This document shows positions 1 to 7,129 of a DNA stretch of 64,000 nucleotides, piece by piece. A model generated the notes under the pieces. The model worked only from the letters and a program-made list of their open reading frames with translations. It was not told the DNA's origin and ran no database searches. The stretch covers positions 124,001 to 188,000 of the IMG/VR virus record IMGVR_UViG_3300048591_000147; one strand, given 5' to 3'. Within the stretch, counting starts at the first letter, position 1; each line of letters opens with the position of its first letter. A program made the translations under genes and the position numbers.

Positions 1-204
1 CGCAAGAATCCAGTTAGCGTGCGCTATCCTGAGTCGTATTATGTCAAGGCATCGGACGCACTGGCTGAGGCTGGTATTAACCCTGATGCTGATGGCTACA
101 AGTATGGCAGCGCGTGGAAGTTTGAAGCTGTACCAGCTCGGGTGATTGCGTGGTTATTCTCTTTTGAGATGGCAGATGATCTGCCAGTAGTGTGGGCTAG
201 ATGA
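1..204 (+). CDS. Early-region hypothetical protein, probably 5'-truncated by the window edge
   Basis: Open frame from the window start to TGA at 202-204; same GC-rich codon style as its neighbours. Confidence 0.6.
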   Translation, partial: RKNPVSVRYPESYYVKASDALAEAGINPDADGYKYGSAWKFEAVPARVIAWLFSFEMADDLPVVWAR

Positions 205-212
205 CCAAAACT

Positions 213-245
213 GTTCAGCAATCGTTCAGCTAAGTGATGTATAAT
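213..245 (+). promoter_or_regulatory. Box-type early promoter 1: GTTCAG-N5-GTTCAG-N10-TATAAT
   Basis: GTTCAG 213-218 and 224-229, TATAAT 240-245, CATACCAAC leader 251-259, AGGA RBS, ATG 272. Confidence 0.85.
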
Positions 246-271
246 TCAATCATACCAACAAGGAACAGACC

Positions 272-517
272 ATGAACTCCAGCGAACTCAAGCGCAACAT
301 CGAACGTAACAATCCCGGTAGCCTGTTCTTTTCGCGTGGTGCCATGCAGAATGGCGGTGACACGATGCGCAACTATGGCGTCTGCACTGCAAAGATCATG
401 ACCCCAGATGGTGAAAAAGAGGTATGGGAATTGTATCGCCGTCAAGCCACCCCACGGGGTTACACTAGCTCAGTGTATTGGGACAAGGCAACATTCAAAG
501 TGGTCTACAAGGTCTGA
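272..517 (+). CDS. Early hypothetical protein (81 aa)
   Basis: ORF with its own promoter and AGGA RBS. Confidence 0.8.
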   Translation: MNSSELKRNIERNNPGSLFFSRGAMQNGGDTMRNYGVCTAKIMTPDGEKEVWELYRRQATPRGYTSSVYWDKATFKVVYKV

Positions 518-549
518 TTCAGCTAACGTTCAGGTTCTGAGCGTATAAT
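517..549 (+). promoter_or_regulatory. Box-type early promoter 2: ATTCAG-N5-GTTCAG-N10-TATAAT
   Basis: Half-sites 517-522 and 528-533, TATAAT 544-549; nearly identical to the promoter at 2797-2829. Confidence 0.85.
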
Positions 550-577
550 ACATTACATCAACCAAGGGAATGCAGCC

Positions 578-967
578 ATGATCCTGAACACTGTCGAAGC
601 CACCATCGCTTGCGAAGCTGCAACCACCATTCTGCTGGGGCATTTCCCGCATTTCATGGTCAATATTCGGGTGACGAGAATTCTTGGCGAGGTCGTTCAG
701 TTCACCGTTGCCAACGTTCCCACCGAAAAGGATGCGCCCTATGGGATCATCCACAATGCATCCTTTCTGCTCAAAGGTCTGATCCAGACTGACCGCAAGG
801 GAGCATACATGGAGAATCCGATTCTGTCTGGCCGTCACCTGAAGTTCCGCAAGATCAGCGGTTCCAGTGAAGCCGAAGTGTTGCAAAAGTTCGTGGCATG
901 GTGTGTCAAGAACAAGGCGGAAATTCTCGCCATCGTCCCGAAACTTCGCGGGTATGAGGTCAGTTAA
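578..967 (+). CDS. Early hypothetical protein (129 aa)
   Basis: ORF with promoter and AAGGGA RBS. Confidence 0.8.
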   Translation: MILNTVEATIACEAATTILLGHFPHFMVNIRVTRILGEVVQFTVANVPTEKDAPYGIIHNASFLLKGLIQTDRKGAYMENPILSGRHLKFRKISGSSEAEVLQKFVAWCVKNKAEILAIVPKLRGYEVS

Positions 968-995
968 GCTGGCGTTCAGGTTGTGGGGGTATAAT
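963..995 (+). promoter_or_regulatory. Box-type early promoter 3: GTTAAG-N5-GTTCAG-N10-TATAAT
   Basis: Half-sites 963-968 and 974-979, TATAAT 990-995, CATACCAA leader. Confidence 0.8.
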
Positions 996-1022
996 ACAAC
1001 ACATACCAAGGGAGAACGCAAA

Positions 1023-1247
1023 ATGTCAAAGAAACGACGTGTCATGGTTCGCGAGACAACGATACGTTTCTCCCCAGTCTTCGAGTGTGAGTGTTGCGGG
1101 AAGGTAGAGGTTGGAGTTGCATTCTCTCAGACATTCTATCATCGTCTACCAGAGCTTGACGAGATAGATGTTCCAGCGCATACGCTGCCACCCGGCTGGA
1201 TAATGTTTCACAATCTCCAGTACTGCGTCAATTGTAACATCGAATGA
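1023..1247 (+). CDS. Small Cys-rich (Zn-ribbon-like) early protein
   Basis: Start moved to ATG 1023 (GGAG RBS); CECC...CVNC motifs. Confidence 0.7.
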   Translation: MSKKRRVMVRETTIRFSPVFECECCGKVEVGVAFSQTFYHRLPELDEIDVPAHTLPPGWIMFHNLQYCVNCNIE

Positions 1248-1268
1248 GCCCTTCGGGGCTCTTTTTTA
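1246..1268 (+). terminator. Rho-independent terminator
   Basis: GAGCCC-TTCG-GGGCTC followed by a T-tract. Confidence 0.9.
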
Positions 1269-1285
1269 TTGTGCCACCACTTCCT

Positions 1286-1333
1286 CCGACCACGCACCCA
1301 TTTTACTACACCCACCCTGAACAGAACCTGAAC
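1286..1333 (-). promoter_or_regulatory. Reverse-oriented box element: GTTCAG-N5-GTTCAG-N11-TAAAAT-GGGTGCGTGGTCGG (motif copy A)
   Basis: CTGAAC at 1317-1322 and 1328-1333 on +; ATTTTA 1300-1305; CCGACCACGCACCC 1286-1299. Confidence 0.7.
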
Positions 1334-1350
1334 GACAAGTCATTGATTTT

Positions 1351-1383
1351 GTTCAGCTTGTGTTCAGCTAACTACTGTAGAAT
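1351..1383 (+). promoter_or_regulatory. Box-type early promoter 4: GTTCAG-N5-GTTCAG-N10-TAGAAT
   Basis: Half-sites 1351-1356 and 1362-1367, extended -10 TG-TAGAAT ending 1383, GAGG RBS. Confidence 0.85.
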
Positions 1384-1410
1384 ACTGACTATACCCAATG
1401 AGGATAGATT

Positions 1411-1788
1411 ATGAACACTGCTGAAAGTCGGCTGAAAGAAACGATGTTCATCGTCGAGGCGACCTCATTCGAACGGCATATGCTCTGGGAAACCAATCAC
1501 ACGAAAGTCAAGTGGGAACAGATTTACGATGGATGGCTGGTGACAGTGGGTAAGCTGGATGATCGTCCCTGCTGTATCGATACTTCATGGGCGCGCATCA
1601 ATGGACAATTGGTCATGTTCTATGAACAGTGTAGCCAAGTGACTGACTGTCTTCAGACTGATGCATGGTTGGATGATCATTTCAATGGTACATGGGATAA
1701 CGGTCACCGTCGAGCGCGAACAGATGCGCAGAATTTTCATCTTTGTTTGAACGCGATCAGGGATGCAAATAACCCGGAGGCATTGTAA
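1411..1788 (+). CDS. Early hypothetical protein (125 aa)
   Basis: ORF with promoter and RBS. Confidence 0.8.
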   Translation: MNTAESRLKETMFIVEATSFERHMLWETNHTKVKWEQIYDGWLVTVGKLDDRPCCIDTSWARINGQLVMFYEQCSQVTDCLQTDAWLDDHFNGTWDNGHRRARTDAQNFHLCLNAIRDANNPEAL

Positions 1789-1789
1789 T

Positions 1790-1996
1790 ATGCAAAAGTC
1801 AGTTGTGATTGATTTGACAGTTCCCATCATGTTCATTACCAGTACGCTGGTGATTCTGAAATTTGTTGGAGCAATCAATCTACCATGGTTGTGGGTCTTT
1901 TTTCCTATCTGGGGCACCTACCTTCTTTTGTTTGTCATCTGGATGATGATCGCCTCCTTTGTTCTTATCATGGTGTTTCTTAAAATTACCCGTTGA
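1790..1996 (+). CDS. Small two-TM membrane protein
   Basis: ATG 1790 after GGAGG; hydrophobic sequence with LKFVGAINLPWLWVFFPIW pattern common in phage membrane proteins. Confidence 0.75.
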   Translation: MQKSVVIDLTVPIMFITSTLVILKFVGAINLPWLWVFFPIWGTYLLLFVIWMMIASFVLIMVFLKITR

Positions 1997-2021
1997 CACC
2001 TAATAAACTATTGGGTATAGT
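1993..2021 (+). promoter_or_regulatory. Canonical sigma70 early promoter
   Basis: TTGACA 1993-1998, 17-nt spacer, TATAGT 2016-2021. Confidence 0.85.
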
Positions 2022-2048
2022 CTCTACATCGTCAACGGAGATAGCCAA

Positions 2049-2426
2049 ATGACCACCGAACGGGTTGCCACGCTGGAAGACTTGCAAGGCGCGTATTCTG
2101 ACGTGTTCAAGGACGTCTATGGCTTTCGTCCCCGTGGTTCCGTTATCTGGAACGATGAGGAAGCGTTGAAGGGTGAATTGACGTACCTGTACGCTGAGCT
2201 TGAGCGTGTGATCGAACGCGAGAAGGGTGAGCAGGCAATCGCTGTAGCCGATTTTGAGCAACGGGTGACTGAGACTATCGCCTTGGGTGCTGGAACGCGA
2301 GAGAACGCGATTCGTTGGATTGCACAGGGCATTGATGACGCTGACCCCGATGGCGTATGTTACTCGCTTGGTTTGCCGTTTGGCTACCTTGGTCAAACGT
2401 ATCTCTTTGAGCGTGAAAGTGCTTGA
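2049..2426 (+). CDS. Early hypothetical protein (125 aa)
   Basis: GGAG RBS; YSDVFKDVYGFRPR motif recurrent in large-phage early proteins. Confidence 0.8.
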   Translation: MTTERVATLEDLQGAYSDVFKDVYGFRPRGSVIWNDEEALKGELTYLYAELERVIEREKGEQAIAVADFEQRVTETIALGAGTRENAIRWIAQGIDDADPDGVCYSLGLPFGYLGQTYLFERESA

Positions 2427-2450
2427 CGTTCAATAAAATCGCGATATAAT
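2423..2450 (+). promoter_or_regulatory. Canonical sigma70 early promoter
   Basis: TTGACG 2423-2428, 16-nt spacer, TATAAT 2445-2450, CATACCAAC leader. Confidence 0.8.
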
Positions 2451-2479
2451 CTCAACCATACCAACTAAGGACCAACGTC

Positions 2480-2806
2480 ATGAAAGTTGCCCCGATTCCT
2501 CCCCGTGATCCGAACAGCACGCCCAATCCCGAATTCGTGCGCCTGTTGAAGGAAGGTCTGCCACGGTTGTGGAATGGCCATGGCTTCGAGGGTCGCAATG
2601 AAGAATTCATCTGCCACACCTTTGATCGTTGGGACGAGTGTACCCCAGCAATCCGTGAAATGATCAGCGCTCGTCTGTATGACAAATGGCATCGAACCTA
2701 TCACGATTGGGCTGATCGGTCCAAGACTATGAACAAGTTCACGAAGGCAGAGATCCAAGATGGTCGCAAGCGTTGGATGCTGGACTTGATCGCTGAGTTC
2801 AGCTAG
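2480..2806 (+). CDS. Early hypothetical protein (108 aa)
   Basis: ORF with AAGGA RBS. Confidence 0.75.
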   Translation: MKVAPIPPRDPNSTPNPEFVRLLKEGLPRLWNGHGFEGRNEEFICHTFDRWDECTPAIREMISARLYDKWHRTYHDWADRSKTMNKFTKAEIQDGRKRWMLDLIAEFS

Positions 2807-2829
2807 CGTTCAGGTTCTGAGCGTATAAT
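2797..2829 (+). promoter_or_regulatory. Box-type early promoter 5: GTTCAG-N5-GTTCAG-N10-TATAAT
   Basis: Half-sites 2797-2802 and 2808-2813, TATAAT 2824-2829. Confidence 0.85.
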
Positions 2830-2857
2830 CTCAACCATACCAGACGAGGAACGAACC

Positions 2858-3106
2858 ATGTTCATGCGAATCGAAGATCAGAACGGGACGGTGTTGCTCT
2901 CTTCGGTGTATCCCGATGATCGTATCATGGACCCTGAAGCATGTCTGTTCGATTACTTGGGTGATTTTGAGCTTGATCGCGTGGTGGAAGTCTCTTGGCG
3001 TGAAGAGGCCAATGGATGCTACGAATATCGCGTGATTTTCTTCGAAGATGAAGAGAATCCCGATCACATCGTGGAGTCTGGCGCCTTCATCATCTCGGAT
3101 AGCTGA
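2858..3106 (+). CDS. Small acidic early protein (82 aa)
   Basis: GAGGA RBS; D/E-rich. Confidence 0.75.
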   Translation: MFMRIEDQNGTVLLSSVYPDDRIMDPEACLFDYLGDFELDRVVEVSWREEANGCYEYRVIFFEDEENPDHIVESGAFIISDS

Positions 3107-3108
3107 GT

Positions 3109-3291
3109 ATGGTACTATTCGTGTATGAACCGTCATGGCTGATTGACCCTGAAGATGAAATTCAACGGAGAATGATGATGGAAAAGGATTTGTCTCGCTA
3201 CGTGGAACAATGGGAGCCCACCATTTTCCGCTCCAAACACTACAAGGCTCGCGTGTTGCGCGCCAAGGCTCGGAGGATCAAGCAATGGTAG
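3109..3291 (+). CDS. Small hypothetical protein (60 aa)
   Basis: Starts 3 nt after the previous stop; followed by a hairpin. Confidence 0.5.
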   Translation: MVLFVYEPSWLIDPEDEIQRRMMMEKDLSRYVEQWEPTIFRSKHYKARVLRAKARRIKQW

Positions 3292-3295
3292 CTTC

Positions 3296-3317
3296 AAGCG
3301 CCCTTTCGGGCGCTTCT
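3296..3317 (+). terminator. Terminator-like hairpin
   Basis: AAGCGCCC-TTTC-GGGCGCTT; weak T-tract. Confidence 0.65.
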
Positions 3318-3332
3318 GGTATCTCAACCTTC

Positions 3333-3380
3333 CCGACCACGCACCCATTTTATACCAACCAACCTGAACCAACGCTGAAT
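3333..3380 (-). promoter_or_regulatory. Reverse-oriented box element: ATTCAG-N5-GTTCAG-N11-TAAAAT-GGGTGCGTGGTCGG (motif copy B)
   Basis: CTGAAC 3364-3369 and CTGAAT 3375-3380 on +; ATTTTA 3347-3352; CCGACCACGCACCC 3333-3346. Confidence 0.7.
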
Positions 3381-3411
3381 GAAACGCGCCAATAAATTTA
3401 CAATCAATTGC

Positions 3412-3440
3412 TTTACAAGCTAATCCATTAGGCGTATAGT
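3412..3440 (+). promoter_or_regulatory. Canonical sigma70 early promoter
   Basis: TTTACA 3412-3417, 17-nt spacer, TATAGT 3435-3440. Confidence 0.75.
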
Positions 3441-3467
3441 TCATCCATACCAGCTAGGGAGAACACC

Positions 3468-3845
3468 ATGGCCAAGCGAATCCAAAAGCCCGTCCTGTTG
3501 ACCAGCAAGACCCATCAGGTCATTGACAAGGATTTCATTGTCAAGGCATTGACGAAAAGCAATGCATGGTTGTTCCGCGCCATCGTGTCGATTTTCGAAT
3601 ACCAAACCGCTGACGAACAGACTGCCGAAGTCACCGCGCACGATAATGGCGTTGGCTTCAGTGGTGTTGATGCACAGATGATGTCCAGCTTCGCCAAACA
3701 GATCATCGAACATGGCAAGGGTAACAGCAAGTTCGCTAGCCCGCTGTCCCCGAAACAGATCGAATTGGCGCGCAAGCGTATGGTCAAGTATGCCGGACAA
3801 TTGCTGCGCATCGCGCAGAGCCGTTCAGCCGCCGTTCAGCTTTAA
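3468..3845 (+). CDS. Early conserved hypothetical protein (125 aa)
   Basis: GGGAG RBS; QTADEQ...NGVGF..DA...LSPKQ...KYAGQL pattern seen in large phages. Confidence 0.8.
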   Translation: MAKRIQKPVLLTSKTHQVIDKDFIVKALTKSNAWLFRAIVSIFEYQTADEQTAEVTAHDNGVGFSGVDAQMMSSFAKQIIEHGKGNSKFASPLSPKQIELARKRMVKYAGQLLRIAQSRSAAVQL

Positions 3846-3855
3846 CCTGTATACT
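3823..3855 (+). promoter_or_regulatory. Box-type early promoter 6: GTTCAG-N5-GTTCAG-N10-TATACT
   Basis: Half-sites 3823-3828 and 3834-3839, TATACT 3850-3855, CATACCAAC leader 3861. Confidence 0.85.
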
Positions 3856-3884
3856 ACTCACATACCAACCAAGGAAGCAAAACC

Positions 3885-4244
3885 ATGAAGTCGATTCGCG
3901 AAGCTCAAACGTTCGTCACCATTCTCAACCTGATTCAGGACCGCTCGCGCGAAATCCTCTGCGATATCGTGGACGCGCTGATCTTCAACCGTGAATCCGT
4001 CCAGTCCGTTCTGAATCGTTGGGGCATCAAGCTCAATGCGGAAGCTCCCGCGATGGCTCCGAACAGTGTCACCATCAACCATGGCGGGCTCGCCTTCAAC
4101 ATGACCATCGTCCAATACAGTCAGGTCGTCAGGCTGATTTACAGTGGCCAGTGGATCGAGGGTATCAAGGCCATTCGCGCAGCAACCAATTCCGGGCTGA
4201 AGGAAGCCAAGGACTTGGCCGAGTACATCCGCGATAACAAGTGA
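3885..4244 (+). CDS. Early protein with C-terminal ribosomal bL12 (L7/L12) CTD-like domain
   Basis: IEGIKAIRAATNSGLKEAKDLAE matches the bL12 KIxxIKxxRxxTGxGLKEAKxxVE signature. Confidence 0.7.
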   Translation: MKSIREAQTFVTILNLIQDRSREILCDIVDALIFNRESVQSVLNRWGIKLNAEAPAMAPNSVTINHGGLAFNMTIVQYSQVVRLIYSGQWIEGIKAIRAATNSGLKEAKDLAEYIRDNK

Positions 4245-4273
4245 TCCATTTTCAAAAACGTAATTTTATTCTG

Positions 4274-4313
4274 AACAACCCCGGATCAGCGATGGTCCGG
4301 GGTTGTTGTTTTT
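4274..4313 (+). terminator. Rho-independent terminator
   Basis: AACAACCCCGGATCA/TGGTCCGGGGTTGTT stem followed by a T-tract. Confidence 0.85.
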
Positions 4314-4331
4314 ATGCCACACCAGATTTTC

Positions 4332-4368
4332 TGGCGAGAATCGCCACAACTAATGGCGAAAATCGCCA
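4332..4368. promoter_or_regulatory. Tandem palindromic operators TGGCGA-N3-TCGCCA (x2)
   Basis: Palindromes with perfect 6-bp arms at 4332-4346 and 4354-4368, 22 bp apart. Confidence 0.7.
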
Positions 4369-4391
4369 CACAATATCAACCGTAAAAGCCC

Positions 4392-4420
4392 TTGTATCTT
4401 TAGTTTAATTGGCGTACAAT
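4392..4420 (+). promoter_or_regulatory. Sigma70 early promoter
   Basis: TTGTAT 4392-4397, 17-nt spacer, TACAAT 4415-4420, CATACCAAC leader, AGGAG RBS. Confidence 0.75.
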
Positions 4421-4445
4421 AGGCACATACCAACAGGAGAACACC

Positions 4446-4838
4446 ATGGAAATCGAAGTCGGGGTAGGGTACGATGATAATGGTGAAATCATCAAGAAAA
4501 TGCTGCCTGCGGTGTTCACCGTCTGTCAGAACTGCGAGGGTCATGGTTTTGTGCTGAACCCCAGCATGGCTGGCCATTGTTACACGCAGGATGAATTCAA
4601 TGATGCGTTCGATGACGAGGATGATCGTGCGGAGTATTTCAAGCGTGGTGGCAAGTATGACGTGCAGTGTCAGCTTTGCAAGGGTGTGCGCGTGGTGAAG
4701 GTCATCGCGGATGATGATCAACTGACTGACGAGCAGAAAGAGATCAGCAGAGCAAACGAGTCTTTTGAGATGGGTCTGCACATGGACGCATACTATGATG
4801 CAATGACGATGCGCGGAGAATCTGGCATCTGGGATTAA
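4446..4838 (+). CDS. Acidic early protein with DnaJ-like Zn-finger motifs
   Basis: CQNCEG.G and CQLCKG motifs. Confidence 0.75.
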   Translation: MEIEVGVGYDDNGEIIKKMLPAVFTVCQNCEGHGFVLNPSMAGHCYTQDEFNDAFDDEDDRAEYFKRGGKYDVQCQLCKGVRVVKVIADDDQLTDEQKEISRANESFEMGLHMDAYYDAMTMRGESGIWD

Positions 4839-5074
4839 TCGTTGGCGGTGCGATCAGTAGCAATGGACTGTAGGGTCGCACCGTCTATCATGAAATGCTG
4901 TATTAGATAATCCTAAATTAGAGTGACGGTGTACTACCACACTAACACACCCGCAGTCTCAATAACCTACCTTTTCGATACAACCGAAAAATCGCGCGAA
5001 GACTCAAAAGCATAGCACGAAAAATAGTTGAAAAATAGTGCTCTTTGGCACTTGTGTTATAAAATAATATCAGG

Positions 5075-5098
5075 CAAAATGAGTGCGTGGTCGGGGAA
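5075..5098 (+). repeat. Intergenic motif copy C (CAAAATGAGTGCGTGGTCGGGGAA)
   Basis: One mismatch to the 19-bp core of copies A/B/D; TTGTGT lies 17 nt upstream of CAAAAT. Confidence 0.8.
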
Positions 5099-5199
5099 CT
5101 CTGGCAGGCAAACGCCCTGCGGCAAAATGATCTTACGAAAGTGGTTGCACGGCATCGGCGCTATGGTATGATTCTCTCACCCCAACGGAGATACCCCAC

Positions 5200-5529
5200 A
5201 TGAGCCTGAGCCGCCTCCGCAACAAAGTCGAAGCCCGCATTGTCCGCGCCATCGTTTCGGACGCGCTGAAAATGGGTTACACCGTGTCGGTGTACGATGG
5301 TGAAGAGTTCGCCATCGAACGCTCCAGCAATCGTAGCGCCATCCTCGCCGAGTGTGCTGCCACTGACGAAGACCGCCTGTACTTCACCCGCAACGGTCAG
5401 ACGAAAGCCATCGGTGTGGTCTGGATCATCTACGGTGAGGGTGACACCTGCATGACTGACTGGACTGACACCGATGAAGTCAACGCCATCCTGAAGCGGG
5501 CCAACAAAATCGCTGGACACGATGACTGA
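5200..5529 (+). CDS. Early hypothetical protein (109 aa)
   Basis: Promoter TTGCAC(5145)-N16-TATGAT(5167), GGAG RBS. Confidence 0.8.
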   Translation: MSLSRLRNKVEARIVRAIVSDALKMGYTVSVYDGEEFAIERSSNRSAILAECAATDEDRLYFTRNGQTKAIGVVWIIYGEGDTCMTDWTDTDEVNAILKRANKIAGHDD

Positions 5530-5544
5530 AATAGTGTAGCAGAC

Positions 5545-5568
5545 AAGCCCCCGAAAGGGGGCTTTTTC
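5545..5568 (+). terminator. Rho-independent terminator
   Basis: AAGCCCCC-GAAA-GGGGGCTT followed by a T-tract. Confidence 0.9.
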
Positions 5569-5618
5569 TGGACCATCTGCGGTACAATTGATTACTTTAC
5601 AGGTACAAAGCAATATGC

Positions 5619-5708
5619 CAAAATGGGTGCGTGGTCGGAGGAACTGGCGGACACCGCCGCGCGCTTCGCGCTAAGGCTGGCAATTTCCCCGACCGCCATC
5701 CCATTTTG
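5619..5708. repeat. Motif copies D (+) and E (-) forming a 90-bp imperfect inverted repeat with two internal hairpins
   Basis: CAAAATGGGTGCGTGGTCGGAGGAA...TTTCCCCGACCGCCATCCCATTTTG; internal GGCGG-ACA-CCGCC and GCGCG-CTT-CGCGC. Confidence 0.75.
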
Positions 5709-5893
5709 AACTAACTTATAAAGCAATGGAAGTGCCATTCGTCGGAAAGTCTAGATGGGGGTCGCTAGCTTCTGGCCGATGCTCGGGCGATCCAGCGGAT
5801 GATCGTTACACCGTTGCAAATGGCGCACGCCGCCTGATATACTACCTTCATCGGGCGGCAATCCTGCTGCCCGACACCTTCGGAGAAAGCACA

Positions 5894-6604
5894 ATGGAAT
5901 TCCTCAAGAACATCAGTGTCAAGTCGGATTTTGGTTTCTGGATCACCATGGGCATGCTGGAGGCGATCTATGTGCTGGCAGAGTGTGCCGGTGGACGCTT
6001 CGCCGCGATCATGGGTTACACTCCGGTGGGCAAAGACTGGACGGTGACGCCCGTCTACGATGCCACGTTCACCAGTCGCTTCGATACTGCCAAGCTCTAT
6101 GCTCGCAAGCTGGAAGCCTTGCAGGCGATCACCTTCGAGGACGTGGCCGATGCCATCGCGAAACAGCCGAAACTCTCTGCGCTCGAACCTGCTGAACTGC
6201 TGGAACTGTTCAATGCTCGCAAGGCAATGGAAGTCGCCAGCCTGCTCCGCACTCGCGAGGATACCGCAGCACACCGCGAAGGTCAGGCACGCTGCCACGC
6301 CACCGTGGAGGATGGTCTGCCCAATGGTGTGCGTGTGCACTACGTCACACAGAAGGGCGCTGACGGGCTCATGCATCCGGTCCTGCGTGATGGTCTGCCC
6401 ATCGCTGAAAGCATCCGTGTGCACGCACTGGAACAGTCTCGCACGTATCGTCAGGCTGGTGTGCGCAAGGTAGTGAACAGTGGTGCGCCAGTGCTCATGG
6501 GCAATGCTATCAGCACGCTACTGAACAAGCGCAGCGTGGGCATCACATCGTTCACACTGCGTGACAACTATGAAGCACTGCGCATTGACGGAGCCACGCT
6601 CTAA
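5894..6604 (+). CDS. Early hypothetical protein (~236 aa), very GC-rich
   Basis: Start moved to ATG 5894 (GGAG RBS; promoter TTGCAA 5814-N18-TATACT 5838). Confidence 0.8.
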   Translation: MEFLKNISVKSDFGFWITMGMLEAIYVLAECAGGRFAAIMGYTPVGKDWTVTPVYDATFTSRFDTAKLYARKLEALQAITFEDVADAIAKQPKLSALEPAELLELFNARKAMEVASLLRTREDTAAHREGQARCHATVEDGLPNGVRVHYVTQKGADGLMHPVLRDGLPIAESIRVHALEQSRTYRQAGVRKVVNSGAPVLMGNAISTLLNKRSVGITSFTLRDNYEALRIDGATL

Positions 6605-6628
6605 CAGTAACAGACAGTAACACAACGC

Positions 6629-6657
6629 GAAGCCCCAGCATGCTGGGGCTTTCGTTT
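6629..6657 (+). terminator. Rho-independent terminator ending the GC-rich block
   Basis: AAGCCCCAGC-AT-GCTGGGGCTT then TCGTTT. Confidence 0.8.
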
Positions 6658-6795
6658 GAGTATGATCAGATAGTAACTAGTTAGTAACTTGATAATGGTC
6701 AGGGGGATTATGTGATAGGTGAAAAACAGTTTGGGGTTACGATGAGTTACTTTATTTACTCATTATATATAATCACTCCGCCGGGGGATCAAGCC

Positions 6796-6830
6796 ATTTA
6801 ATTTCTATACCCTATTTAATTTCTATACCC
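6796..6830. repeat. Tandem 17-bp direct repeat ATTTAATTTCTATACCC x2
   Basis: Copies at 6796-6812 and 6814-6830 in the non-coding GC/AT junction. Confidence 0.9.
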
Positions 6831-6958
6831 CTTTTTCCATTCTATCCAAAATCCTATAATATTTTCTGTAATTCTATCACACGATTTGGCCATTCTCTCT
6901 AGACGATTTGTTCCGCGTATTTACTTGATGGTATCTCTGAAAAATTTCCAGAAAAATT

Positions 6959-7129
6959 TTAACGCTTATTGATCAAGAGGATAGCGTCTGTCATATTCTT
7001 TAATAGTACATATATCGACGCATTTACTTGTAATTTAGCTTTTGTTATCTCTGGCGTATCATTCTCTTCTGCTTCAAATGTTAAATCAACAAGTGCAAAA
7101 GCCTTGGCAACTCTTTCTGCGTTATTCAT
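6959..7129 (-). CDS. Small hypothetical protein (56 aa, MNNAERVAKAF...), below the ORF-track cutoff
   Basis: Translated by hand; starts just after the cca stop with an AAGGA RBS. Confidence 0.6.
   Translation of the reverse strand: MNNAERVAKAFALVDLTFEAEENDTPEITKAKLQVNASIYVLLKNMTDAILLINKR

What the first reader, a model, noticed from the sequence alone, without database searches (positions are those of the whole stretch)
204..4446. Early region is a shuffleable promoter-leader-gene cassette array in which promoters supply the upstream stop codons
Seen: promoters at 518-549 and 2798-2829 are identical at 31 of 32 nt, while the 3' half of the latter (TATAATCTCAACCATACCA) is identical to the canonical promoter at 2445-2463, i.e. 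a mosaic. A CATACCA(AC) leader recurs at 251, 1002, 2457, 2836, 3446, 3861 and 4426. Upstream stops lie inside or overlap the next promoter (TGA in TTGACA 1994-1996 and TTGACG 2424-2426; TAA in GTTAAG 965-967; the ends of ORFs 2480-2806 and 3468-3845 are encoded by box promoters). Established: repeated promoter cassettes mediate gene shuffling in some T4-type phages. Inference: recombination between these short units swaps, deletes or captures single genes and can switch a gene between constitutive and box-dependent control.
Basis: partly seen in the sequence, partly recalled or inferred. Interest (0 to 1): 0.62.

Follow-up and report, generated by a model that had tools for sequence, protein, structure and literature searches.

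The report
Shuffled promoter-gene cassettes, jumbo phage
The first 6.6 kb of the window is the end of a variable gene island in an uncultured 315-kb phage, where almost every small gene has its own short promoter-leader unit; related phages carry these genes in different orders and behind different promoters, much like the regulatory cassettes already known to shuffle genes in T4-type phages.

Summary
Window 204-4446 holds 12 small genes and 10 compact promoter-leader units. Six have a double box (RTTCAG-N5-GTTCAG, 10 nt before TATAAT). Four are sigma70-like. The ATG lies 25-30 nt after the -10, and CATACCA sits at the predicted start site. Upstream ORFs end inside the next promoter, and this recurs across the lineage: 40 of 89 box promoters hold such a stop, and 10 of 11 box-1 TTAAG variants supply the in-frame TAA.

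The region is the right end of a 65-70 kb island of raised GC in a 315-kb jumbo phage with T4-like replication genes. Five or six related metagenomic lineages carry the same genes in different orders and contents. Promoter halves are mosaic. Single genes are flanked by exact 15-19 nt repeats of the -10/leader. Three orthologues switch between box and sigma70 promoters. Many junctions fall at box, -10, leader or terminator edges.

Some junctions lie inside ORFs or at unrelated microhomology. Recombination through the repeats is therefore inferred, not shown, and circles are untested.

The closest known system is the PeSL cassettes of T4-type phages. This is a new variant: it has no stem-loop in most units and a new double-box promoter class.

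The parts
1..204 (+). 3' end of gene gA (158 aa, starts upstream of the window)
   Evidence: Its orthologue in G001 lies elsewhere and has a box promoter instead of a sigma70-like one.
212..271 (+). P1: double-box promoter (boxes 213-218 and 224-229, -10 at 240-245) plus CATACCAAC leader and RBS
   Evidence: A close relative replaces 205-264 with 71 other letters.
272..517 (+). g1, 81-aa ORFan
   Evidence: It is first in this genome, last in G001, and between g10 and g12 in G4.
516..577 (+). P2: double-box promoter with an ACATTACATCAACC-type leader; the g1 stop TGA overlaps box 1
   Evidence: A close relative diverges after position 537.
578..967 (+). g2, 129 aa
   Evidence: Its promoter is box-type here and in G001, G002 and G4, but sigma70-like in G5.
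962..1022 (+). P3: box promoter whose box 1 is GTTAAG and supplies the g2 stop (TAA 965-967)
1023..1247 (+). g3, 74 aa, with CxxC pairs
   Evidence: G001 keeps only its last ~12 nt plus the terminator, behind a box promoter.
1246..1270 (+). Terminator 1 (6-bp GC stem, tetraloop, T-run)
1286..1333 (-). Antisense box-driven promoter-like element (boxes 1317-1322 and 1328-1333, TAAAAT, invariant GGGTGCGTGGTCGG)
   Evidence: Breakpoints at 1275, 1306-1308 and 1335-1337 in relatives.
1350..1410 (+). P4: box promoter with -10 TAGAAT
   Evidence: The same upstream half is joined to another leader in G001 and in a metagenome contig that diverges after 1385.
1411..1996 (+). g4 (1411-1788, phrog_18096) and g5 (1790-1996, membrane-like)
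   Evidence: Both are absent from a ~94% identical relative; the joint is 1335 to 1993.
1993..2048 (+). P5: sigma70-like TTGACA-17-TATAGT; its TGA is the g5 stop
2049..2426 (+). g6, 125 aa (phrog_21968)
   Evidence: In G4 it sits behind a P8-like promoter and directly before g10.
2423..2479 (+). P6: sigma70-like TTGACG-16-TATAAT plus CCATACCAAC leader; its TGA is the g6 stop
   Evidence: Homology to G001 begins at the -10, at 2443.
2480..2806 (+). g7, 108 aa, flanked by the exact 19-nt direct repeat at 2445 and 2824
   Evidence: It follows a RadC-like gene in G001 and G002.
2796..2857 (+). P7: mosaic box promoter (5' half like P2, 3' half like P6); it encodes the last codons and TAG stop of g7
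2858..3291 (+). g8 (2858-3106) and g9 (3109-3291)
   Evidence: A g9-like gene follows g2 directly in G5.
3297..3316 (+). Terminator 2 hairpin
   Evidence: It is replaced by 66 other letters in one relative.
3333..3380 (-). Second antisense box-driven element, 80% identical to 1286-1335 and 2047 nt from it
   Evidence: Breakpoints at 3330-3332 in three runs.
3412..3467 (+). P8: sigma70-like TTTACA-17-TATAGT plus CCATACCAG leader
3468..3845 (+). g10, 125 aa (phrog_21015); its last 8 codons and stop are encoded by P9
   Evidence: Relatives without P9 have other C-termini.
3822..3884 (+). P9: box promoter with -10 TATACT and CATACCAAC leader
   Evidence: A P9-type promoter drives g1 in G001 and G4.
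3885..4244 (+). g11, 119 aa, with a weak L7/L12 C-terminal-like motif
   Evidence: The slot between P9 and terminator 3 holds g1 in G4.
4274..4317 (+). Terminator 3 (15-bp stem plus T-run)
   Evidence: It is conserved behind different genes in G001 and G4.
4392..4445 (+). P10: TTGTAT-17-TACAAT plus CATACCAAC leader, in front of g12 (4446-4838)

Best explanation
What it is. Window 1-6600 is the right-hand end of a hyperplastic island of raised GC (about 62-130.6 kb of a 315-kb jumbo phage with T4-like DNA polymerase, RNA ligases and a UvsX/RecA-type recombinase). The island is packed with small, mostly orphan genes.

The unit. Most genes carry a compact regulatory unit made of two interchangeable halves.
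- The upstream half is either a near-consensus sigma70 -35 or two RTTCAG boxes 11 bp apart that take the place of the -35. Both end in a consensus -10.
- The downstream half is a leader of about 20 nt from a few families (CATACCAAC, ACATTACATCAACC, CTTAACAACTGGAG) plus the RBS and ATG.
- The previous ORF usually runs into the unit and stops there.
- Multi-gene blocks end in a terminator followed by a conserved antisense promoter element.

How it works (inferred). These 15-65 nt units are dispersed in one orientation. The phage's general recombination system, probably during mixed infection with relatives, crosses over within them. The crossovers fall mostly at the -10/leader and at box or terminator-element edges. 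The outcomes are deletion, insertion and replacement of one to a few genes, and exchange of promoter halves, so a gene can move between host-sigma70 and box-dependent control. Illegitimate or microhomology events also contribute.

Shown: the anatomy, its conservation, the mosaicism, the reshuffled orders and the junction positions. Inferred: promoter activity, timing, the box-binding factor, the recombination mechanism and circular intermediates.
For: Anatomy:
-. The double box emerges without being pre-selected.
- It is conserved in three genomes whose backbones have 31-37% GC.

Island context and recombinase:
-.

Different orders in relatives:
- G000: g1 to g14.
- G001: RadC, g7, g3 remnant, g2, X3-X5, g1.
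- G002: g14, RadC, g7, x, g2, g10, x, g12, g13.
- G4: g2, X3-X5, g6, g10, orf, g1, g12, g14.
- G5: g2, g9-like, Y, g10, Z.
- A ~94% identical relative shows four structural differences within 2.1 kb, at 204/265, 537/1275 and 1335/1993.

Junctions in the units:
- G4 has g6-P6-g10 where G000 has g6-P6-[g7..P8]-g10. The two G000 copies of CCATACCA at 2456 and 3445 bound the difference.
- Homology to G001 starts at the P6 -10.
- The slot between P9 and terminator 3 holds g11 or g1.
- The P4 upstream half is joined to another leader.

Mosaic P7:
- 14/15 identity at variable positions against a mean of 6.9.

Repeat-flanked cassettes:
- Five single genes in the island are flanked by exact 15-19 nt -10/leader repeats. 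Two control stretches of backbone of the same length have none at promoters.
- In G001 a 65-nt promoter-leader-start repeat flanks g2h plus X3.

Promoter class switches:
-.

Breakpoint positions in metagenome contigs:
- 13 of 22 distinct sites fall in the 25% of sequence that is regulatory (binomial p about 8e-4).
Against: - G001 carries a deletion scar joining codon 71 of g1 to the last 32 codons of g14, with no shared repeat.
- G001 lacks a 970-nt block present in G4, and the junction has only about 7 nt of microhomology.
- Remnants of gene 3' ends lie upstream of some promoters.
- Genes are packed so tightly that any viable junction between intact genes must fall in a promoter. Junction position alone therefore cannot separate repeat-mediated recombination from selection on random events.
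- Most relatives are 50-80% identical, so many breakpoints are fuzzy.
- The close relatives are known only as de Bruijn contigs.
- There is no transcription data. The 'RNA-Seq' runs are probably DNA.
- No box-binding factor was found. Pfam models for the OmpR-type winged helix and sigma70 region 4 gave no match, and the MotA model's control did not ring.
- The left two thirds of the island is largely collinear between G000 and G001. Shuffling of order is concentrated at this end.
Confidence: 0.68

Rival explanations
1. The repeats are alike only because they are promoters under common functional constraint. Gene order changes arise by illegitimate or microhomology recombination anywhere, and selection keeps only junctions that fall between intact genes. 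The units mark the junctions but do not cause them.
For: - Scar inside g1/g14.
- Microhomology junction.
- Remnants of gene ends.
- Dense packing leaves the promoter as the only intergenic DNA.
Against: - P2 and P7 are nearly identical at non-consensus positions, while their leaders belong to different families.
- Exact 15-23 nt repeats lie at the -10/leader and flank single genes, with none at promoters in two backbone controls.
- G001 has a 65-nt repeat that includes the first codons.
- The indel between G000 and G4 is bounded by two leader copies.
Confidence: 0.2
2. Cassettes move by a site-specific or nuclease-driven mechanism. This could be integron-like capture at the terminator-associated element, or homing-endonuclease-triggered gene conversion. 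General recombination is not the route.
For: - An invariant 20-nt element sits at block ends.
- An HNH endonuclease gene lies in the island.
Against: - The genome has no tyrosine or serine recombinase.
- Each cassette has its own promoter, unlike integron cassettes.
- The element has box or -35 motifs at promoter spacing, which fits a promoter rather than a recombination site.
- Many junctions lie at the -10/leader, away from the element.
Confidence: 0.07
3. The differing orders are assembly artefacts: metagenome assemblers jumped between co-occurring strains at the repeated promoters.
For: - All genomes are metagenome assemblies.
- Several related strains co-occur in wastewater runs.
Against: - Exact repeats in the window are at most 23 nt, shorter than usual assembly k-mers.
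- The G001 arrangement recurs in an independent contig at 164x coverage. The G002 arrangement recurs in two other assemblies.
- Contigs at 99% identity or more confirm the g6-P6-g7 and P7-g8 joins.
Confidence: 0.03

Closest known systems
PeSL (promoter-early stem-loop) cassettes of T4-type phages (Arbiol et al. 2010, PMC2839356; Comeau et al. 2014, PMC4122927)
   Same: - Dispersed short regulatory repeats lie upstream of orphan genes in hyperplastic regions.
- The unit includes the stop codon of the upstream gene, the promoter, the Shine-Dalgarno sequence and the start codon.
- Indels and replacements between relatives lie at or next to the units.
- Single genes are flanked by two units.
- The phage has T4-like replication and recombination genes.
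   Different: - Most units here have no stem-loop. Terminators are separate and occur only at block ends.
- Six of ten units lack a -35 and carry a double box instead.
[quoted passage not shown]
- The host phage is a distant jumbo lineage (DNA polymerase 43% identical to Xanthomonas phage Xoo-sp13).
- Mini-circles are not shown.
T4 middle promoters (MotA box plus sigma70 -10, sigma appropriation by MotA/AsiA); from established knowledge
   Same: A good -10 is combined with a phage-specific upstream element in place of the -35. These promoters are interspersed with consensus sigma70 early promoters in front of small genes.
   Different: - The element is a direct repeat of RTTCAG with an 11-bp period, at about -39/-34 and -28/-23. 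It is not a single TGCTT-type box at -30.
- No MotA match was found, although that search's control also failed.
- Box promoters are confined to the island and do not precede replication genes.
[quoted passage not shown]
   Same: Two short direct repeats one helical turn apart lie about 10 bp upstream of the -10. The half-site TTCAG differs from the cre/blr half-site TTCAC by one base.
   Different: No OmpR-type winged-helix protein is encoded by the phage. The host is unknown. This is a resemblance, not a test.
Integron gene-cassette arrays
   Same: Both are one-directional arrays of small, exchangeable, mostly unknown genes.
   Different: There is no integrase and no attC-type sites at each cassette. 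Every cassette brings its own promoter.

Membership tests
PeSL cassettes | Repeated sigma70-like early promoter motif upstream of ORFans | tested here: inconclusive
   Four of ten units in 204-4446 are sigma70-like. Six have a consensus -10 but a double box in place of the -35.
PeSL cassettes | Stem-loop (terminator or attenuator) within or overlapping the promoter unit | tested here: not met
   The terminator scan finds hairpins only at block ends (1246, 4274; also 3297 by eye). P1, P2, P3, P5, P6, P7 and P9 have none.
PeSL cassettes | Unit spans the upstream stop codon through the SD and start codon of the next gene | tested here: met
   The PeSL layout is described in PMC2839356.
PeSL cassettes | Concentrated in hyperplastic regions, next to genes that differ between relatives | tested here: met
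   60 of 68 box matches lie in the 60-130 kb island. Only 3 of the 14 genes are shared with G001 and 6 with G002.
PeSL cassettes | Indel and replacement junctions between relatives lie in or beside the units | tested here: met
.
PeSL cassettes | Recombination between flanking units yields mini-circles | not testable with these tools
   Only contigs were available, with no raw reads. Repeat-flanked single genes exist.
T4 MotA-dependent middle promoters | MotA box (TGCTT-type) centred at -30 | tested here: not met
   The consensus is RTTCAG-N5-GTTCAG-N10-TATAAT.
T4 MotA-dependent middle promoters | Phage encodes MotA (and AsiA) | tested here: inconclusive
   PF09114 gave no match, but the control genomes gave none either. 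AsiA was not searched.
Integron cassette array | Tyrosine recombinase IntI and attC sites | tested here: not met
   PF00589 and PF00239 have no match in the genome.
OmpR/PhoB-type activated promoters | Direct repeats at an 11-bp period, about 10 bp upstream of the -10, replacing the -35 | tested here: met
   The spacing is constant in 16 G000 promoters and in relatives.
OmpR/PhoB-type activated promoters | A cognate winged-helix regulator binds the repeats | not testable with these tools
   The phage encodes none (PF00486), and the host is unknown.

The most novel reading that the evidence does not exclude
The island runs on a previously undescribed two-tier promoter code. Host-sigma70 promoters and a double-box class, read by an unknown activator, share the same -10 and leaders. 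Recombination at the -10/leader rewires the timing of single genes as readily as it moves them. The same box system also drives an invariant antisense promoter (TAAAAT plus GGGTGCGTGGTCGG) placed behind terminators. This could give programmed antisense transcription or small RNAs that shut early blocks off. On this reading the phage family has evolved a self-contained, integrase-free cassette system with built-in regulatory switching.
Probability: 0.3. Interest if true: 0.72.

Novelty: new variant of a known kind. Interest (0 to 1): 0.5.

Why it matters
Hyperplastic regions hold most of the unknown genes of large phages, including host-takeover and anti-defence genes. This island has an ArdC-like gene behind a box promoter.

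- If confirmed, regulatory-cassette shuffling would not be peculiar to classical T4-like phages. It would also operate in a distant, uncultured jumbo-phage clade with a different promoter grammar.
- The work gives concrete repeat pairs whose recombination products can be looked for.
- It defines a conserved double-box promoter class and a 20-nt invariant element. Both can be used to find this phage family in metagenomes and to look for the unknown regulator.
- It shows that promoter capture changes protein C-termini, because ORFs end inside the promoters.

Tried and rejected
- Megablast of the region against 50,697 phage records found nothing. The nearest cultured relatives are distant Xanthomonas, Stenotrophomonas and Ralstonia jumbo phages.
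- A pattern scan of IMG/VR for the strict box promoter found one unrelated-looking contig, G003, with a single weak match.
- The search for related loci with g1 found nothing. With the backbone neighbour gene it found only 34-35% relatives.
- Rfam found no family in 1-7000.
- Pfam and PHROGs leave most of the 14 genes without function.
- Searches for a regulator (OmpR-type winged helix, sigma70 region 4, MotA) found nothing.
- A scan of conserved island genes gave enzymes and an ArdC-like protein but no DNA-binding regulator.
- Sequencing runs labelled RNA-Seq turned out to be contigs that are probably DNA, so they give no expression evidence.
- tRNA-like reading of the 20-nt element: its reverse strand can sit next to T-arm-like hairpins, but aragorn calls no tRNA there and the hairpins are ordinary tetraloop terminators.
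- Single antisense transcripts are not unusually structured (z = -0.9).
- Complex prediction, structure prediction and the large protein searches were not used. No claim here rests on them.

Full report
CONTEXT

- The window is bases 124001-188000 of a 314,956-bp virus record with direct terminal repeats.
- The genome is about 37% GC, but the stretch from about 62 to 130.6 kb rises to 40-50% GC. The finding lies at the 50% GC right end of that stretch, and GC drops at window ~6.6 kb.
- The backbone encodes a T4-type family B DNA polymerase, NrdA, RNA ligases and a UvsX/RecA-type recombinase. It also carries 34 tRNAs.
- The nearest cultured phages are distant: the DNA polymerase is 43% identical to those of Xanthomonas phages Xoo-sp13 and XacN1.
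- The region has no nucleotide match in 50,697 phage records.

CHECK OF THE OBSERVATION

- Layout. Window 204-4446 holds 12 + strand genes, named here g1 to g11 plus the start of g12, and 10 promoter-like units.
- Box units. Six have two RTTCAG boxes 11 bp apart, 10 nt before a consensus -10. They start at 212, 516, 962, 1350, 2796 and 3822.
- Sigma70-like units. Four are sigma70-like, at 1993, 2423, 3412 and 4392.
- Spacing. The ATG always follows the -10 by 25-30 nt. CATACCA begins 5-6 nt after the -10 in seven units, so its A is the likely transcript start.
- CATACCA excess. The motif occurs 26 times in the window against 8.8 +/- 3.3 in shuffles.
- Mosaic promoter. The 516 and 2796 promoters share an exact 23-mer. 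The 2423 and 2796 promoters share an exact 19-mer from the -10 through CATACCA. At the 15 positions that are not part of the consensus, the 516/2796 pair scores 14 against a mean of 6.9 (sd 1.9), with the next best at 11. The 2796 promoter is therefore a true mosaic.
- Unbiased recovery of the box. Upstream regions were anchored only on -10, RBS and ATG. The double box appears by itself as the consensus of the regions without a -35.
- Distribution. The box motif is almost confined to the island.
- Stops inside promoters.
  - 40 of 89 box promoters in three genomes contain the stop of an upstream ORF of at least 40 aa.
  - 10 of 11 box-1 variants with TTAAG give the in-frame TAA.
  - In a partial count, 10 of 21 sigma70-type promoters hold the upstream stop, five of them as the TGA of TTGAC.

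RELATIVES

- A 20-nt element from the region (TAAAAT plus GGGTGCGTGGTCGG) found two IMG/VR records. G001 is 306,759 bp and complete. G002 is a 129,621-bp fragment.
- The same element found 30 metagenome stretches. These add two further lineages:
  - G4 = JACCDT010195331.1 (L077, L069 and L060 are contiguous).
  - G5 = L076 plus L058.
- The metagenome stretches also include independent assemblies that repeat the G001 and G002 arrangements.
- Wastewater runs hold contigs of strains 93-99% identical to the window.
- All lineages share the island of raised GC, although their backbones have 31-37% GC. All share the box promoter grammar.

GENE ORDER

- Of the 14 genes g1 to g14, G001 has only g1, g2 and g7. 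G002 has g2, g7, g10, g12, g13 and g14.
- Orders:
  - G000: g1 to g14.
  - G001: RadC-like, g7, remnant of g3, g2, X3, X4, X5, g1.
  - G002: g14, RadC-like, g7, x, g2, g10, x, g12, g13.
  - G4: g2, X3, X4, X5, g6, g10, orf, g1, g12, g14.
  - G5: g2, g9-like, Y, g10, Z.
- The rest of the island is broadly collinear between G000 and G001 with many indels. Reordering is concentrated at this end.

JUNCTIONS IN THE UNITS

- G4 has g6, a P6-type promoter and then g10. G000 has g7, P7, g8, g9, terminator 2, the antisense element and P8 in between. The two G000 copies of CCATACCA at 2456 and 3445 bound the difference.
- Homology between G000 and G001 upstream of g7 begins at the -10 of P6. The upstream gene and the -35 differ.
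- The slot between P9 and terminator 3 holds g11 in G000 and g1 in G4, with conserved flanks.
- The upstream half of P4 is joined to another leader family in G001. The same is seen in a metagenome contig that diverges right after the -10, at 1385.
- In a ~94% identical strain, one 2.5-kb contig shows four changes within 2.1 kb:
  - 205-264 (P1) is replaced.
  - The sequence diverges after 537, inside P2.
  - It returns at 1275, just after terminator 1.
  - It skips 1335 to 1993, from the edge of the antisense boxes to the first base of the -35 of P5.
- Among the joints and loose ends listed, adapters and hairpin artefacts were set aside. Of the remaining 22 distinct sites, 13 lie in the 25% of sequence that is regulatory (p about 8e-4).

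REPEAT-FLANKED CASSETTES

- g7 lies between exact 19-nt repeats.
- Four more single genes in the island, including gA just upstream of the window, lie between exact 15-18 nt repeats of -10/leader sequence.
- Two backbone stretches of equal length have no such pairs at promoters.
- G001 has a 65-nt repeat with one mismatch, covering boxes, -10, leader and the first codons. It flanks g2h plus X3.
- These are the structures expected from, or apt for, insertion and excision by recombination between units. This is the scheme proposed for PeSLs (PMC2839356).

PROMOTER CLASS SWITCHING

- g2 has a box promoter in G000, G001, G002 and G4 but a TTGACA-17-TATGAT promoter with the CCATACCAAC leader in G5.
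- gA is sigma70-like in G000 and box-type in G001.
- The gene at G000 104783 (82% identical protein in G001) is box-type in G000 and sigma70-like in G001.

PROMOTERS ENCODING ORF ENDS

- g10 ends SRSAAVQL and a stop inside P9 in G000.
- It has different C-termini in G5 and G4, where P9 is absent and the next gene is coupled or differently placed.

EVIDENCE AGAINST A PURELY REPEAT-MEDIATED PROCESS

- G001 carries a scar that joins codon 71 of g1 out of frame to the last 32 codons of g14. There is no shared repeat.
- G001 keeps about 20 nt of the g1 3' end in front of the g2 promoter, and about 12 nt of the g3 3' end behind a box promoter.
- A 970-nt block present in G4 is missing from G001, with only about 7 nt of microhomology at the joint.
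- The genes are so tightly packed that any viable junction must fall in a promoter. Position alone cannot prove causation.
- The stronger arguments for a role of the repeats are the mosaic promoter halves, the near-identity at non-consensus positions and the exact flanking repeats.

RIVALS

- Assembly artefact is unlikely. Exact repeats are at most 23 nt. Two arrangements are reproduced by independent assemblies, one at 164x coverage. Contigs at 99% identity or more confirm the g6-P6-g7 and P7-g8 joins.
- An integron-like or site-specific route is unlikely. There is no tyrosine or serine recombinase, and every cassette has its own promoter.
- An HNH endonuclease gene in the island could add local gene conversion.

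WHAT THE BOX IS

- It is unknown.
- Its architecture is two direct repeats one helical turn apart, 10 bp before the -10, replacing the -35. Activators of the OmpR/PhoB type use this layout. [quoted passage not shown]
- The phage encodes no OmpR-type winged helix and no sigma70 region 4. No MotA match was found, but that control failed.
- This is a lead, not a test.

COMPARISON WITH KNOWN SYSTEMS

- The closest known system is the PeSL cassette of T4-type phages (PMC2839356, PMC4122927).
- Shared with PeSLs: dispersed regulatory repeats in hyperplastic regions; units that run from the upstream stop to the next start codon; junctions between relatives at or near the units; genes flanked by two units.
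- Different from PeSLs: most units here have no stem-loop; most lack a -35 and use the double box; the crossover zone is the -10/leader; multi-gene blocks end in a terminator plus a conserved antisense promoter element; the phage lineage is distant.
- I therefore file it as working like PeSLs but not as a PeSL in the strict sense.

VERDICT

Shuffling, capture, loss and regulatory switching of cassettes are seen in comparative data. The mechanism and circular intermediates remain inferred.
- Novelty: a new variant of a known kind.
- Interest: moderate (0.5). It would be higher if the double-box regulon and the antisense element prove to be a new temporal control scheme.

Noticed in passing
window 1286-1333 (-), 3333-3380 (-), 5076-5096 (+), 5619-5640 (+); 17 copies in G000 65-130 kb: An invariant promoter-like element: TAAAAT followed by GGGTGCGTGGTCGG. 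A box pair or a -35 sits at correct promoter spacing upstream. Copies antisense to the genes sit just behind terminators and are almost always box-driven. Copies in the sense direction are mostly sigma70-driven. The exact 20-mer occurs in 9 IMG/VR stretches and 30 metagenome stretches. Its function is unknown; it may give antisense or small RNAs, or serve as a protein-loading site.
   Followed up: partly
window 5596-5715: Two copies of that element face each other. The + strand transcript would fold into a long hairpin (-41.9 kcal/mol, z = -3.1) ending in a U-run, so it is a candidate RNA of about 85 nt. G002 has two similar convergent pairs (44849/44941 and 50870/50970).
   Followed up: partly
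G000 62-130.6 kb (window 1-6600 is its right end); G001 70-120 kb; G002 44-110 kb: The small-gene island is 40-50% GC in all three genomes, although the backbones are 37, 33 and 31% GC. GC is highest at the end next to the conserved boundary. Possible reasons are a shared exchangeable gene pool or adaptation of early genes to host codon usage.
   Followed up: partly
G001 (L034 10389-10600, minus strand): The g1 homologue is truncated at codon 71 and runs out of frame into the last 32 codons of a g14-like gene. This is the scar of a deletion of about 6 kb relative to the G000 arrangement.
   Followed up: yes
G000 76266-76343 and 106782-106856: Among the 34 tRNA genes, aragorn calls one with anticodon CUA (amber-reading) and one with anticodon AUU. 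No sign of stop-codon recoding was looked for.
   Followed up: no
window 3885-4244 (g11) and 4446-4838 (g12): g11 has a sub-threshold match to the ribosomal protein L7/L12 C-terminal domain (residues 91-113). g12 has two CxxCxGxG-like motifs of the DnaJ zinc-finger type, also sub-threshold.
   Followed up: no
G000 109064-109939, 94451-94780, 78825-79913, 77042-77647: Conserved island genes include an ArdC-like antirestriction protein (ArdC N-terminal domain plus zincin peptidase) behind a box promoter. There is also an HNH endonuclease, a T4 Rnl1-like RNA ligase and a PP-loop ATPase. A RadC-like gene precedes g7 in G001 and G002 but is absent from the window.
   Followed up: partly
runs X1-X4: Wastewater libraries labelled 'METAGENOMIC RNA-Seq cDNA' hold phage contigs on both coding and intergenic parts, and the tool flags them as probably DNA. 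They give no evidence of expression.
   Followed up: yes
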